Assembly (NCBI RefSeq): GCF_947568905.1 | Contig: NC_079171.1 | Location: 57,474,001-57,538,000 of the forward strand | Length of the DNA stretch: 64,000 nt | Source: Ostrea edulis | Lineage: Eukaryota | Direction of reading: 5' to 3' | In this document: positions 4,151-14,202 of the stretch, piece by piece | Numbering within the stretch: position 1 is the first letter of the stretch | How the letters are laid out: every line of letters starts with the position of its first letter | Notes under the pieces: generated by a model | What the model saw: the letters and a program-made list of their open reading frames with translations, nothing else | What the model was told of the DNA's origin: nothing | Database searches by the model: none | Position numbers and translations under genes: made by a program

Positions 4151-5003
4151 GATGGCATGCAAAACAGTTGTGACATGATATTCAAGTAAGTTTATGGATT
4201 TTGGCATCCTTTCAGTTCTGCTTAGTAAATACCAAAATAGATATGAGTATATGAACGTCCATTTATTTCTAATAATAAAACAAAATATTTTCTCATGAGA
4301 TTATCAAAATAGTCATCAAGAAAATAATCGCTACTAACATTAACTGTTACTGACAGAATAATCGTGGAGAGAAGAACTTGTTACAGAGATACCGTAAACA
4401 CGATCAATATGAAAGTGATGTGAATTATGCAACTGTCTAAGTAGATAGTTTATCTGCGAACTACTGAGTGTTTCCTGTAACCGAACAAATTATGATTTTC
4501 ATTAGTTTGAATAGTGTAACCCCCTCCCCTTGCTCTCTTTCTTCCGAAAATGCTCACAACACGCATGTACAAAACTAGATATGAATTAAAAGGTACATAT
4601 ATACATGCAATAAATATGGCTTGAACAGGTTTCGCCATTGTTTACAAAACATGTATAAAATATATGATAGTGTATTGATAGGTTTTTGAAGTGCGTGTCA
4701 AGCTTATCAATTTAGAGTCTAAGTCGAACTGGTGTCAAGTAATGCAATGCATCTGAAACGTGATAGAAATAGAAAAGGGTTAAGACAAAATATGTTACCG
4801 AAAACATTTGGAATGCTGGTGGATTTACTGTTCTTGTTGCTGTTTTTTTCTTACTGGCAGTCGTCCCTATCCCCACCACAGAACGGTATTGTGGGCAGTT
4901 TTACATTTGTACAGCTTATCGACTACTTTTGACAAACTTGAATTTCTTATCTTTCTGATGTCTTAACGTGTACATAAATAGGATCACACCACCTGTGAAC
5001 AAC

Positions 5004-7538
5004 ATGGCGTTCTCTCTGTGTCTATTGTTCGTTCTGGGGAGCATTGTGTTTAGCCTACAGGACCAAACAATCCCTGAGGTGTCCAGCCCACAAGACGAAA
5101 CGGTCCGTGATGTACACAGCCCAGATGACCAAATAGTACGTGAAATAGACCGTAGATTGTTGTTAAATGACCCACAAACAATTCTGGTCCAGTTAGAGGC
5201 AATACAAAGAGAAATGCAGACTTTAAAAACACTGGTCAACTCACAGCAAACTAAGATCCAATCAATGCAAACGCTGGAAACATTGGTCAACACCCAACAG
5301 ACTAAGATCCAATCACTGGACACGCTGGTCAACTCACAACACATTCAAATGCAATCTTTACAGAGTCAGTTGACCAAAACTGCAAACCAAGGTAATCCAA
5401 GTTTAGAAGAAAAGTTTAGAATCTAAGCAAACATCTTTTGATAAATATTTACATTGTTTCATTTTCAGATTTGAATTCATACATGACCTGTGGAATAATA
5501 ATATGAACATTGCTATTCTAAAATTACAAGCAATTAAGGAAACTAGTATTGTCATATTTTTGAACATTCAATTTAGTTTTATATTCGTCTAATATATCCC
5601 TTTTATATTTGACATGATTTTGTTTTACGATTTTAGCTGCAGATTTAAAAAGAATTGTCATAAAACGTTTCAAAGTTTCATGATCATTTTTTTTTAATTT
5701 CAAACATGAGCATTTTTTAGTCTTATAGCGTGTTTTCTTTTTTATTAAACATTCATATCAGGCTAAAATTACAGCGAAATATGTCCTCTCTTGTCAAGAT
5801 TTTTCGCGATGTTTTATCATTCCGAAAAAGAAAGGTGAAGATAACGAACAGTGATCAATCTCATAACTCCTACAAGTAATACAAAATAGATAGTTGGACA
5901 AACACGGACCCCTGGACACACCAGAGGTGGGATCAGGTGCCTAGGTGGAGTAAGCATCCCCTGTCGACCGGTCACACCCGCCGTGAGCCCCATATCCTGT
6001 TCAGGTAAACGGAGTTATCCGCCGTCAAGATAAATGTGCCAAGAACGGCTTAACAATCGGTATGGAACACGTCAGACAGCATTTGACCCAATGATAGGTT
6101 GTATTATTATTCAAATTATTCAAAAAATGATTGAGAGCTTGTATCACTATTTACATTATGCAATCACTTCATATGAGATGCTTTAACGAGTCATTAAATT
6201 AGATTTTGGTGTAGAGATCTACATTAAGTTTGAATATCACAGTCTGAGTATTAGATGTTGCCTGTTTAAGCAGACTAAAGATGATTACAATATCATTACT
6301 AATTTCATTTCTTAAATAAATGTAGAGCCAATTCAAGAAAATTGTACATAACGACCGTCAATTACTTCCTTTTAAAGGAATGCAAAATCTTCTCCATTAG
6401 TACAGAAATGGATATACTTTAAATTGGACAGGGCTCGGTACAACTTATACAGTATGGGGACGGAAAAATTGTCCGGCACTCAATGGAACTAGCACTGTGT
6501 ACTCAGGTATGTAAAATATAATCTGAACAAAGAATGATACGGTGACCGGCAGTGGGTCAAAGGTCAATGAAATGCAGCATCTATACAAAGGGAAGGGTAA
6601 CATTGCACGGCACGAAATACTAGTATTCCTTTTAGTAGCTAACTTTATTCATTTGTTGCTGTGGGGCGCAAAATTACTATACAATATAAGCTAAAATATG
6701 CTAAATTCAAAGACCTTTTAGGAGCTTTGCCGTTTGGGCCACACCATTGAACATAAGTTGAATCGCTGAAAAATGCTTGAAGGTTATCACAAACCAGTCA
6801 AAATTATACAAAGTAACATTATACAATGTGCATTCTGAAATCTGCATATTTGCTTACAAGATTTCATGGAATATAGGGGATCTCACCAAAGTAAAGCGCT
6901 AGATCCGTGCCCTTTGGGATATCTTGGCGGTCTCCAGATGTCTTGATTTAACACCACCACACCCACCCCACTATTTGAATTTTGATTTTTCTGATTTTTT
7001 TATATCAATCTTTCCATTCGTTATTGTTGTTAAAAGGAAATCTTATACGTTTTGCCTAGGTATAAGTGCAGGTTCACCGTACCATGTTGGCGGTGGAGGA
7101 GCGAATACATTATGTCTTACCCATAATCCTGATCAGCCGCCGTCTGACTTTCCTACCTACCGAGAAAAAGATGGATGGTTGTATGGAAGCGAGTATCAGT
7201 TCACGTACAGAAATTATGCAATAGATGACGATGTCCCATGCGCCGTTTGTCTTGCAGCATATTCAACTGCCGTTTTGATGATTCCATCGAAAACAAGTTG
7301 TCCCAGTAGTTGGAACGTGGAATATCGCGGGTTTTTAACATCCCAGAGTGCCACAGACGGAAGACCGTCATATGATTATATGTGTCTTCATGAAAATGCA
7401 GAGTATCTGACAGAAGGGGCTCGCCAACAGAATTATAACGGACATTTGTTTTATCCGGTGATAACACAGTGTGGCTCATTACCATGTCCGCCATACATCA
7501 ATGCAAAATACGTTACGTGTGTTGTTTGTTCTAAGTAA
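5004..7538 (+). CDS. Secreted short-chain-collagen-C4-like protein, copy B (~313 aa)
   Basis: join(5004-5391, 6432-6506, 7060-7538), all phase-1 GT-AG introns, 942 nt. Hydrophobic signal peptide MAFSLCLLFVLGSIVFS, DRRLLLNDP motif, Gln-rich heptad coiled coil, then YTVWGRKNCP...GANTLCL...DVPCAVC...CGSLPCPPY...TCVVCSK. The exon-2 acceptor (ttggacAG) is weak, so that boundary is less certain. AATAAA at 7561. Confidence 0.8.
5834..6105 (-). mobile_element. Penelope-like 3' end in intron 1 of copy B
   Basis: Close match to 55030-55300. Confidence 0.8.
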
Positions 7539-12696: not shown

Positions 12697-14202
12697 ATGG
12701 CATTCCCTCTCTGTCTACCGTTGGTTCTGGGAAGCATTATGTCCAGCCTACAGGACCAAACAATTCGTGAGGTAGACCGTAGATTGTTATTGAATGACCC
12801 GCAAACAATTCAGGTCCAGTTGGAGGCAGTGCAAAAAGAAATGCAGACCTTAAAAACATTGGTCAACACCCAGCAGACTAAGATCCAATTAATGGACACA
12901 CTGGTCAACTCACAGCAGACTAAGATCCAAACGCAGGAGACACTGGTCAACTCACAACAAAGTCAAATCCAATCATTACAGAGTCAGCTGACCAAACCTC
13001 CAAATCAAGGTAATCCAAGTTAAGAGGAAAAGTTAAAAATCCAAGCAAATGTTTTGCATCGTTTCGCTTTCAGATTTGAATTATGCTACAACTGGAGTTA
13101 AAATGTGAGCATTACAATGAAGGAGTTGAACAGGTACGTGTAAAAGGAGGGGAAGGAGAATGATAGAGAATGGAACAAGTGAAATCCCTGTCCGGTCCCC
13201 CCAAATATCGGTGGAAAATATATTTTCCAAATTAAGATTAACACTAGTCCTGGAGTGTTGATTCGGAATGTCGAATTGCTCACCATACCATTAAAAGATT
13301 CTGAAATTGATCTCTGTAAAGCGTGAATGTGGCAGGTAAATATGAACCTTAAGCTTCAAATGCTTATGGTTTGATGACAAATCTATTCGCTATATAAAAA
13401 CCTTAACTTAACTTTATTGCTACATACAAAATGATAAATACGAATTTCAAATTGGAATCTTTCAGGAGCTGTATACACAATTTGGGGAAGAAAAAGCTGT
13501 CCGCTGGTTAACGGTACTACCACCCTGTACACAGGTAAAACCTCTATATAGGTGTAACATATAATCTGTTTTGCTATTATACAAAGTTTGTTATCTGAAT
13601 CCAAAAGATACATTGATTTACTGGATTATTCCCCTTTACTTTGAAGAAGATAGCACACATGTTCACTTTACATGAGTAACGTTATCTAGTTGTTTCATTC
13701 ACATTTTCAATACTTTTTGTCAGGTATAACAGGTGGCAAAATGTATTACATAAAAGGAAGTGGCGTCACTACGCTGTGTTTGCCTCACGATCCCGATTCA
13801 CTTTTGGGGGCGTTGATCCACATCCCCTACGACATCAACAACACACCTTACATATTTGGCGCGGAGTTCGAGATGAACTACAAAAACGTTGCCCGCAACG
13901 ATGATGTACCGTGCGCTGTTTGTCATGCGCAAACCTCAACTTCCGCTGTAATGATTCCAGCAAAACTCACGTGCCCGCAAAACTGGAAACTGCAGTACAG
14001 CGGGATGATGAGCGCGGAAAGATCTGACCACTTTGCATCTGATTTTATTTGTGTTGATTTAAATCCTGAGTATATAGAGGGAACGCGGGCTAGGAATGCG
14101 GACGGCAGGTTGATTCACCCCGCGAAAGCCAGATGCGGTTCCCTTCCGTGCCCCCCATACAAGGACAAACAGTATGTCTCGTGTGTCGTTTGTGCAAACT
14201 AA
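12697..14202 (+). CDS. Secreted short-chain-collagen-C4-like protein, copy D (~286 aa)
   Basis: join(12697-13009, 13466-13534, 13724-14202), 861 nt, phase-1 GT-AG introns. Exon 1 resembles copy B; exons 2-3 resemble copies A and C. AATAAA at 14242. Confidence 0.9.

What the first reader, a model, noticed from the sequence alone, without database searches (positions are those of the whole stretch)
4895..14202. Mosaic genes: exon 1 and exons 2-3 have different closest relatives
D exon 1, its upstream region and the start of intron 1 (12580-13110) align with B (4895-5510). D exons 2-3 are instead close to C (GAVYTIWGR.SCPLVNGTTTLYTG and a largely identical exon 3). B's exons 2-3 are much more divergent and C's exon 1 is unlike B/D. 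All introns are phase 1, so modules swap in frame. Inference: recombination within intron 1 is mixing stalk (signal plus coiled coil) and head (NC1-like) modules, a possible diversification system like that of other bivalve coiled-coil plus recognition-domain families.
Basis: partly seen in the sequence, partly recalled or inferred. Interest (0 to 1): 0.7.

Follow-up and report, generated by a model that had tools for sequence, protein, structure and literature searches.

The report
Chimeric oyster gene: swapped stalk and head
In a tandem array of flat-oyster genes for secreted coiled-coil proteins with a collagen-IV-like head, gene D is a real hybrid of its neighbours B (front) and C (back), joined inside intron 1. 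This is an ordinary germline gene fusion, not a special diversity-generating machine.

Summary
The window is Ostrea edulis chromosome sequence. It holds the end of a tandem array of nine same-strand, three-exon 'short-chain collagen C4-like' genes (U1, U2, U3, B', C', A, B, C, D).

- **B-like part of D.** D's 5' flank, exon 1 and first 109 nt of intron 1 (12546-13118) align only with B and B' (about 82% identity; exon 1 dS 0.34-0.46).
- **C-like part of D.** From 13119-13154 onward (rest of intron 1, exons 2-3, 3' flank), D aligns only with C and C' (exon 3 dS 0.39-0.44).
- **Switch point.** Informative coding sites change at the exon 1/2 boundary: 72:7 versus 22:187, Fisher p 2e-39.
- **Polarity.** The syntenic Saccostrea cucullata cluster carries the parental combinations (B stalk with B head, C stalk with C head), so D is the derived chimera. 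AU tests reject congruent stalk and head trees.
- **Not an artefact.** Copy A (94-99% identical to D) carries the same junction. DNA contigs from three other sequencing runs span it.
- **Selection.** Both halves of D have dN/dS of about 0.2.

The mechanism is an old illegitimate recombination or deletion between intron 1 of a B-type and a C-type copy. Other stalk/head discordances suggest occasional repeats of this over evolutionary time. These are U1 and two Crassostrea virginica gene models. Nothing indicates a dedicated or ongoing diversification system. Expression of D was not shown.

The parts
225..961 (+). Gene A, the copy of D. Exon 2 (225-293) and exon 3 (483-961) lie in the window. 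Exon 1 lies 235-547 nt upstream of the window (genome C8:57473454-57473766). A has the same chimeric structure as D.
   Evidence: A and D are 98.3% identical over 1-1023 vs 13242-14264. A's exon 1 is 94% aa identical to D's. The stop codon is changed from TAA to TAC, which extends the ORF by 46 aa. The conserved Cys-Pro motif of exon 2 reads Cys-Ser.
4861..5516 (+). Part of gene B that is homologous to D: 143 nt of 5' flank, exon 1 (5004-5391) and the first 125 nt of intron 1.
   Evidence: blastn and local alignments. About 82% identity in aligned columns of the 5' segment.
5004..7538 (+). Gene B: exons 5004-5391, 6432-6506 and 7060-7538, 313 aa. B-type stalk with B-type head.
   Evidence: The model is identical to annotated O. 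edulis protein P0189. The Saccostrea orthologue P0121 has the same stalk type and head type.
8895..10390 (+). Gene C: exons 8895-9078, 9441-9509 and 9918-10390, 241 aa. Short C-type stalk with C-type head.
   Evidence: The model is identical to P0001, 'short-chain collagen C4-like [Ostrea edulis]'. The Saccostrea orthologue P0003 has the same combination.
9199..10437 (+). Part of gene C that is homologous to D: the 3' part of intron 1, exon 2, the ends of intron 2, exon 3 and 47 nt of 3' flank.
   Evidence: Relative to C' and D, C has lost about 120 nt of intron 1 just 5' of this stretch.
12546..13118 (+). B-derived tract of D: 151 nt of 5' flank, exon 1 (12697-13009) and the first 109 nt of intron 1.
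   Evidence: B and B' both align up to exactly 13118. Beyond that point they stay alike to each other but differ from D and A. Exon 1 dS is 0.46 for D-B and 0.34 for D-B'.
13119..13153 (+). Breakpoint interval in D's intron 1. The most likely junction is 13118/13119, with a possible 3-nt microhomology (AAT).
   Evidence: The local alignment with C' intron 1 runs from about D 13116. blastn gives firm C' similarity from 13154. DNA contigs of runs X1-X3 span 12936-13539 (records 3, 10, 18).
13154..14321 (+). C-derived tract of D: the rest of intron 1, exon 2 (13466-13534), intron 2, exon 3 (13724-14202) and the 3' flank.
   Evidence: Exon 3 dS is 0.44 for D-C and 0.39 for D-C'. In the head tree D and A sit inside the Ostrea C clade, with support 98/97.

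Best explanation
Gene D, and its later copy A, is a germline chimeric paralogue that arose in the Ostrea lineage.

**Structure.** Within a tandem, same-strand array, intron 1 of a B-type copy was joined to intron 1 of a C-type copy. The join sits 109 nt into the B-type intron and about 156 nt into the C-type intron. The product combines two parts:
- the B-type promoter-proximal region and exon 1 (signal peptide, the conserved RRLLLNDP motif, and a coiled coil with 14-residue repeats);
- the C-type exons 2-3 (a spongin-type, collagen-IV-NC1-like head).

Every intron is phase 1, so the hybrid reads in frame.

**Likely route (inferred).** The adjacent B-C pair was duplicated, and an illegitimate, microhomology-level deletion or unequal exchange then removed the sequence between the two introns. 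This resembles a haemoglobin-Lepore-type fusion, except that both parents are retained.

**Afterwards.** The hybrid was kept under purifying selection. It was later duplicated with its neighbours or homogenised by gene conversion, giving the layout B' C' A | B C D.

**What is shown and what is inferred.** Shown: the mosaic, the breakpoint interval, the polarity (D is derived) and its presence in independent DNA samples. Inferred: the order of events, the joining mechanism and the function.
For: - **Partner switch in non-coding and coding DNA.** D changes partner at 13118/13119-13153.
- **Informative sites.** 72:7 in exon 1 versus 22:187 in exons 2-3, p 1.8e-39.
- **Similar age of the two halves.** dS is 0.34-0.46 for the B-like half and 0.39-0.44 for the C-like half. 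The cross comparisons are saturated. This fits a single origin.
- **Synteny and polarity.** The Saccostrea cucullata locus L050 has the order U, a degenerate U copy, B-type, C-type. Its proteins carry the parental combinations.
- **Head tree.** (Cv_P0007,(Sc_P0003,((C,C'),(D,A)))) with supports 99/96 and 98/97. The AU test rejects D and A grouping with B heads (p 3e-6).
- **Stalk tree.** The AU test rejects D, A, C, C' as a clade (p 4e-7). Adding the Saccostrea C stalk gives p 4e-4.
- **Shared 5' edge.** The 5' edge of B-D homology, about 145 nt upstream of the ATG, coincides with the 5' edge of B-B' homology. This fits duplication of a whole unit.
- **Selection.** dN/dS is about 0.21 in both halves.
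- **Independent samples.** Copy A carries the junction, and DNA contigs of three further runs span it.
Against: - No RNA evidence for D or A was available.
- Neither protein turned up among annotated proteins. In one search D's full length (286 aa) falls outside the length window searched. In one search it falls inside the window (147-467 aa), so its absence there depends on the query sharing enough short words with D.
- A has lost its stop codon and has a Pro-to-Ser change in a conserved motif, so one copy may be decaying.
- The exon 1 protein tree built from O. edulis sequences alone could not reject a (C,C',D,A) clade (AU p 0.13).
- DNA upstream of 12546 matches neither the B flank nor the C flank. 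Fusion-by-deletion therefore cannot be separated from a 573-nt conversion tract.
- The two triplet units differ stepwise in non-coding identity: B'/B about 70%, C'/C about 95%, A/D 98-99%. The history after the fusion is therefore more complex than one duplication.
Confidence: 0.85

Rival explanations
1. Gene conversion rather than fusion. A duplicate of C had about 570 nt (promoter-proximal region to intron 1) overwritten by a B-type donor.
For: The B-like tract is bounded on both sides (12546 and 13118), and neither flank further upstream is B-like. The array shows later homogenisation: unit identities step from 70% to 95% to 99%.
Against: B and C share no alignable sequence at either tract end to prime conversion. 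The 5' boundary coincides with the general limit of B-B' homology. DNA upstream of 12546 is not C-like either.
Confidence: 0.2
2. A standing diversification system. Intron-1 recombination, or read-through splicing between neighbouring genes, keeps reassorting stalks and heads, as proposed for some invertebrate immune families.
For: - All introns are phase 1 and the genes are tandem on one strand.
- Further discordances exist. U1 has an old stalk type shared with C. virginica proteins, but its head and 3' flank are 83% identical to U2.
- C. virginica P0133 has a C stalk with a U head, and P0007 has a U1-type stalk with a C head.
- U2 carries an extra stalk-like exon in intron 1 that is used in isoform X2.
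Against: - The events are few and old (dS 0.3-0.5).
- The heads are under purifying selection (omega 0.13-0.32).
- DNA contigs of four runs show one junction form only.
- The C. virginica combinations rest on predicted isoforms and may be merged neighbouring genes.
- The AU tests for the extra discordances were chosen after seeing the trees.
- No immune function is documented.
Confidence: 0.1
3. No recombination. The true tree is ((C,D),B) throughout, with rate acceleration and deletion in C's exon 1 and fast divergence of B's head.
For: With O. edulis sequences only, the exon 1 protein tree does not reject (C,C',D,A) (p 0.13). C's exon 1 is short.
Against: - Neutral DNA (5' flank and the start of intron 1) is alignable between B and D but not between C and D. 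The reverse holds 3' of the junction.
- The C-type stalk is conserved with the C-type head in Saccostrea, at 61-63% identity over 62 aa, so it is not a recent acceleration.
- AU tests reject congruence once the orthologues are included.
Confidence: 0.02
4. Assembly artefact: a mis-join of B-like and C-like reads.
For: Tandem paralogues are prone to collapse or chimeric assembly.
Against: Two separate copies (A and D, 1.4-6% apart) carry the same junction. Contigs from independent DNA runs of two other studies cross the junction region (12936-13539) without a break.
Confidence: 0.01

Closest known systems
Lepore-type fusion genes in tandem arrays (haemoglobin delta-beta Lepore; red/green opsin hybrids). 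This comparison rests on established knowledge, not on a tool result.
   Same: The 5' part comes from one paralogue and the 3' part from its same-strand neighbour. There is a single junction, the hybrid is in frame and it is inherited in the germline.
   Different: The junction lies in non-homologous intron sequence, with at most 3 nt of microhomology, so this is not homologous unequal crossing-over. Both parents are retained next to the hybrid, which requires a prior duplication. The hybrid was itself later duplicated.
Exon shuffling through phase-compatible (1-1) introns in extracellular-matrix genes (general theme of PMC3308698, seen by title and abstract only).
   Same: The breakpoint is in an intron, all introns are phase 1, and the modules correspond to structural units (helical stalk and beta-rich head).
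   Different: The shuffling is between close paralogues of one family, not between unrelated domain families.
Spongin short-chain collagens, annotated 'short-chain collagen C4' (Aouacheria 2006 and Exposito 1991, as cited in PMC5395295).
   Same: The head is homologous to sponge short-chain collagen C4 proteins (P0146, E 4.5e-29). It folds like collagen IV NC1: the top 37 Foldseek hits are NC1, and VIA-align gives Z 7.2 over 152 residues.
   Different: There is no Gly-X-Y collagenous domain. A signal peptide plus heptad-based coiled coil takes its place. Pfam C4 and a PDB profile search do not reach significance.
Diversified invertebrate recognition families with an oligomerising stalk plus a globular head (bivalve C1q-domain proteins, snail FREPs). 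This is a resemblance from general knowledge, not tested here.
   Same: Secreted proteins with an N-terminal coiled coil and a C-terminal globular head, found in large tandem families (at least 80 head-like matches in this genome).
   Different: There is no evidence of somatic or hypervariable diversification or of positive selection. The published mentions read here list the family under structural/ECM genes or call it involved in shell biomineralisation. They appear in a gene-family count table and a differential-expression study.

Membership tests
Spongin short-chain collagen / 'short-chain collagen C4-like' | C-terminal NC1-type domain homologous to collagen IV NC1 | tested here: met
   - Sequence: B exon 3 matches Amphimedon and Corticium short-chain collagen C4 / collagen alpha-5(IV)-like proteins at E 1e-26 to 1e-29.
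- Fold: an AF2 model (pLDDT 85) has collagen IV NC1 as all of its top 37 Foldseek hits (E about 1e-3). VIA-align gives Z 7.2 and 7.0 over 152-158 of 181 residues.
- Caveat: Pfam C4 and a PDB profile search give no hit, and the Z values are only middling.
Spongin short-chain collagen / 'short-chain collagen C4-like' | Short collagenous Gly-X-Y domain N-terminal to the NC1 domain | tested here: not met
   There is no Gly-X-Y run in B, C or D and no PF01391 hit, whereas the sponge relatives carry one. AF2 predicts a helix at residues 33-55 of C. Exon 1 has 42-nt (14-aa) tandem repeats.
Lepore-type fusion by unequal crossing-over | 5' part from the upstream paralogue and 3' part from the adjacent downstream paralogue, joined at a single junction | tested here: met
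   B lies immediately upstream of C in both Ostrea units and in Saccostrea.
Lepore-type fusion by unequal crossing-over | Junction lies within sequence homologous between the two parents | tested here: not met
   Intron 1 of B and of C are not alignable. At most a 3-nt AAT is shared at the junction.
Lepore-type fusion by unequal crossing-over | The fusion replaces the two parental genes (deletion product) | tested here: not met
   B and C are intact next to D.
Exon shuffling via symmetric-phase introns | Same intron phase on both sides of the exchanged module, with the breakpoint in an intron | tested here: met
   Both introns are phase 1 in B, C and D, and exon 2 is 69 or 75 nt. The breakpoint is at 13119-13153, inside intron 1.
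Dedicated or somatic diversification system (FREP-, VLR- or DGR-like) | Many alternative junctions or variants within or between individuals | tested here: not met
   DNA contigs of four runs from two studies show one junction form only. Contigs drop rare variants, so this is weak evidence.
Dedicated or somatic diversification system (FREP-, VLR- or DGR-like) | Diversifying selection on the recognition module | tested here: not met
   Exon 3 dN/dS is 0.21 for D-C, 0.32 for B-B', 0.15 for U1-U2 and 0.13 for A-D (pairwise NG86 only).

The most novel reading that the evidence does not exclude
The oyster coiled-coil/NC1-head family works as a combinatorial kit. Phase-1 introns and a same-strand tandem layout would let stalks and heads reassort repeatedly, by germline recombination and possibly by read-through splicing between neighbouring genes.

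Both the coiled coil and the NC1-type head are oligomerisation determinants. Hybrids such as D could therefore bridge B-type and C-type trimers and widen the set of heteromeric assemblies.

The different stalk/head pairings in Ostrea, Saccostrea and Crassostrea virginica would be traces of this process.
Probability: 0.15. Interest if true: 0.65.

Novelty: new member of a known kind. Interest (0 to 1): 0.4.

Why it matters
- **A clean, datable example.** This is exon shuffling between neighbouring paralogues, with the breakpoint placed to within about 35 nt in an intron. The direction of change is fixed by an outgroup cluster, and there is evidence that the hybrid was kept by selection.
- **An under-described family variant.** In oysters, 'short-chain collagen C4-like' proteins have replaced the collagen triple helix with a coiled coil while keeping the NC1-type head. 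That architecture makes the two oligomerising modules exchangeable.
- **Practical points.** For genome annotation, gene trees for this family must be built per exon. Predicted 'isoforms' in such arrays may also be merged neighbouring genes.

Tried and rejected
- **Pfam.** Each exon of B, C and D gave nothing above threshold, and C4 (PF01413) was not hit.
- **PDB profile search.** The family alignment found no NC1 chain. Only the fold comparison found NC1.
- **Exon 1 protein tree, O. edulis only.** It was too short to reject the rate-acceleration rival (AU p 0.13). The test became decisive only after adding Saccostrea and Crassostrea proteins.
- **Genome-wide exon 1 versus exon 3 comparison.** The loci already held contained exon 1 for too few genes.
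- **The look-up of encoding contigs.** It had no record for P0003 or P0121. P0030 gave the Saccostrea locus, but that locus ends inside the C-type gene, so I could not see what follows C there.
- **RNA evidence.** The only runs found were DNA contigs.
- **Flank comparison.** Comparing D's upstream flank with the B and C flanks, to separate fusion from conversion, found no homology to either.
- **Rfam.** The scan of 1-16000 found nothing at gathering score.
- **Literature.** Searches found no paper on recombination or coiled-coil stalks in this family.
- **Spliced models.** Spliced (joined) models of D and A were not sent to any database search. Database searches were made exon by exon by reference. 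Joined models were used only inside local scripts for alignment, a tblastn against the window, dN/dS and trees.
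Full report
**What is there**

The window is G000:C8:57474001-57538000. Gene C's product is identical to P0001, 'short-chain collagen C4-like [Ostrea edulis]', which lies on a 77,126,126-nt contig. Gene B's product is identical to P0189. The organism is therefore the European flat oyster.

Three complete genes lie on the + strand between 5004 and 14202. Each has three exons, GT-AG introns, both introns in phase 1 and an intact ORF:
- B: 5004-5391 / 6432-6506 / 7060-7538
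- C: 8895-9078 / 9441-9509 / 9918-10390
- D: 12697-13009 / 13466-13534 / 13724-14202

A fourth gene, A, is cut by the window start. Its exon 2 is at 225-293 and its exon 3 at 483-961.

Searching the whole genome and fetching the 40 kb upstream shows a tandem array of nine same-strand genes: U1, U2, U3, B', C', A, B, C, D. The last six form two collinear units, B' C' A and B C D, about 13.1 kb apart.

blastn aligns B 4861-5516 with D 12546-13118. This covers the 5' flank, exon 1 and the start of intron 1. It also aligns C 9199-9546 and 9861-10437 with D 13222-13569 and 13672-14246. There is no B-D similarity in 3' non-coding DNA and no C-D similarity in 5' non-coding DNA.

| Comparison | Exon 1 aa identity | Exon 1 dS | Exon 3 aa identity | Exon 3 dS |
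|---|---|---|---|---|
| D vs B | 80% | 0.46 | 45% | saturated |
| D vs B' | 84% | 0.34 | 47% | saturated |
| D vs C | 50% (over 56 aligned codons) | saturated | 85% | 0.44 |
| D vs C' | 45% | saturated | 85% | 0.39 |

In a three-way codon alignment, D agrees with B against C at 72 sites and with C against B at 7 sites in exon 1. In exons 2-3 the counts are 22 and 187. The switch falls exactly at the exon 1/2 boundary (Fisher p 1.8e-39).

**The breakpoint**

B and B' both align with D and A up to D 13118, which is 109 nt into intron 1. Beyond that point B and B' remain similar to each other but not to D or A.

C' intron 1 aligns with D from about 13116 in a local alignment, and firmly from 13154 by blastn. 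That point is about 156 nt into the C' intron. C has lost roughly 120 nt here, which is why C-D similarity starts only at 13222.

The junction therefore lies in 13119-13153, most likely at 13118/13119. B', C' and D all read AAT there, a possible 3-nt microhomology. This last point is an inference from sequences that are about 20% diverged.

**Not an artefact**

A carries the same junction. DNA contigs of runs X1-X3 cover 12936-13539 without a break (records 3, 10, 18).

**Which gene is the mosaic**

The Saccostrea cucullata locus L050 is syntenic. Its order is a U-type gene, a degenerate U-type gene, a B-type gene and a C-type gene. Its proteins carry these combinations:
- P0003: C-type stalk with C-type head
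- P0121: B-type stalk end with B-type head
- P0030: U2-type stalk with U-type head

The head tree gives (Cv_P0007,(Sc_P0003,((C,C'),(D,A)))) with supports 99/96 and 98/97. It gives (Sc_P0121,(B,B')) with support 100/99. The AU test rejects D and A grouping with B-type heads (p 3e-6).

The stalk tree places D and A with B, B' and U2. The AU test rejects (D,A,C,C') at p 4e-7. Adding the Saccostrea C stalk gives p 4e-4, and further adding C. virginica P0133 gives p 0.007.

With O. edulis sequences alone, the short exon 1 could not reject that clade (p 0.13). The outgroup proteins and the non-coding evidence are what exclude the 'rate acceleration' rival.

D is therefore derived. It formed after the Ostrea-Saccostrea split.

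**How it most likely arose**

The two halves of D are about equally old relative to their donors (dS about 0.4). The 5' limit of B-D homology, about 145 nt upstream of the ATG, is also the limit of B-B' homology.

The simplest reading has two steps. A B-C pair was duplicated, and then an illegitimate deletion or exchange joined intron 1 of the B copy to intron 1 of the C copy. A 573-nt conversion tract cannot be excluded, because DNA upstream of 12546 matches neither the B flank nor the C flank.

After the fusion, dN/dS stayed near 0.21 in both halves, which argues for a functional product.

The two units are not uniformly diverged. Non-coding identity is about 70% for B'/B, about 95% for C'/C and 98-99% for A/D. 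The 5' segments of B, B' and D/A form a near-trichotomy at 81-83% identity. Later homogenisation of the C-D part, or staggered duplications, must be assumed. I could not resolve the order.

**Is it a system?**

Other discordances exist.
- **U1.** Its exon 3 and at least 550 nt of 3' flank are 83% identical to U2. Its exon 1 and flanks share no nucleotide similarity with U2. Its stalk groups with the C. virginica proteins P0007 and P0122.
- **C. virginica.** P0133 pairs a C-type stalk with a U-type head. P0007 pairs a U1-type stalk with a C-type head.
- **U2.** It carries an extra stalk-like exon inside intron 1, which is used in annotated isoform X2.

These fit occasional germline reassortment. 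Three caveats apply. The AU tests for these cases were chosen after seeing the trees. The C. virginica proteins are predicted isoforms and may merge neighbouring genes. The events are old.

The heads are under purifying selection. Contigs from four DNA runs show a single junction form. I therefore see no dedicated diversification mechanism.

**What the proteins are**

Exon 1 encodes a signal peptide, a conserved (K/R)R(L/I)LL-x-DP motif and a helix with 14-residue tandem repeats.

Exons 2-3 encode a beta-rich, cysteine-rich head.
- Its sequence relatives include sponge short-chain collagen C4 proteins that carry Gly-X-Y repeats.
- The AF2 model (pLDDT 85) has collagen IV NC1 as its best structural matches. 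The top 37 Foldseek hits are NC1, and VIA-align gives Z 7.2 over 152 residues.
- Pfam and a PDB profile search do not reach significance.

[quoted passage not shown] The oyster genes lack the collagenous part. Function is unknown. The published mentions read here list the family under structural/ECM genes or describe it as involved in shell biomineralisation. They appear in a gene-family count table and a differential-expression study.

**Limits**

- No RNA run was available, so expression and splicing of D are predicted, not shown.
- D and A were not seen among annotated proteins. In one search, D's 286 aa lies outside the length window (87-276 aa). In one search it lies inside the window (147-467 aa), so its absence there depends on shared short words with the Saccostrea query.
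- The genome-wide exon 1 versus exon 3 test could not be run.
- Joined (spliced) models of D and A were not submitted to any database search. Those searches were made exon by exon by reference. Joined models were used only inside local scripts.

Noticed in passing
window 1-14264 and L049 (genome C8:57464001-57474000): The two units B' C' A and B C D are collinear, but non-coding identity steps from about 70% (B'/B) to about 95% (C'/C) to 98-99% (A/D). This implies later gene conversion or staggered duplication after the fusion.
   Followed up: partly
window 959-961 and 258-262: Copy A has lost its stop codon (TAA to TAC), which extends the ORF by 46 aa. The conserved Cys-Pro of exon 2 reads Cys-Ser, so A may be decaying. 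The A-to-C change seen at 14202 in contigs of runs X2 and X3 is probably this copy.
   Followed up: partly
L046:8215-8846 and L047:4466-4942 (gene U1): U1's exon 2 has a 1-nt deletion and a GT-to-TT donor. The annotated protein P0021 skips exon 2, which stays in frame because both introns are phase 1. U1's stalk is an old type, while its head and 3' flank are U2-like. This looks like a second mosaic.
   Followed up: partly
L048:4180-4660 (gene U3, exon 1): U3's exon 1 has a deletion, a frameshift and a stop codon, so U3 is probably a pseudogene.
   Followed up: no
L047:7905-8007 (intron 1 of U2): A second, partial copy of the stalk exon with its donor site lies inside U2's intron 1. Annotated isoform X2 (P0187) includes it. 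U3 has the same piece.
   Followed up: no
window 5831-6105, 1140-1400, 3507-3711 and several places in L048/L049: A dispersed repeat of about 270 nt (75-96% identity, both orientations) sits in B's intron 1 and in several intergenic spacers of the array. It is a possible substrate for rearrangements. No Rfam family matches it.
   Followed up: no
window 14270-14385: A perfect 49-nt inverted repeat with an 18-nt loop starts 6 nt after the point where A-D homology ends (14264), at the edge of the duplicated unit.
   Followed up: no
window 12854-12930 (D exon 1 repeats): Contigs of runs X1-X3 show a 'goes back 77' joint with 16 extra letters. This would be a form with about 93 nt more of the 42-nt stalk repeat. 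It could be repeat-number variation or cross-mapping of a paralogue.
   Followed up: no
L050 (Saccostrea cucullata JAVVLV010005374.1:151873-174122): The orthologous cluster lies entirely within the span of a 622-aa LRR-protein gene on the opposite strand.
   Followed up: no
genome C9:27.5-28.8 Mb: About 40 matches cover only the second half of the head (query residues about 78-157, open frames of about 88 aa), clustered on one chromosome. This may be a separate subfamily or a half-domain array.
   Followed up: no
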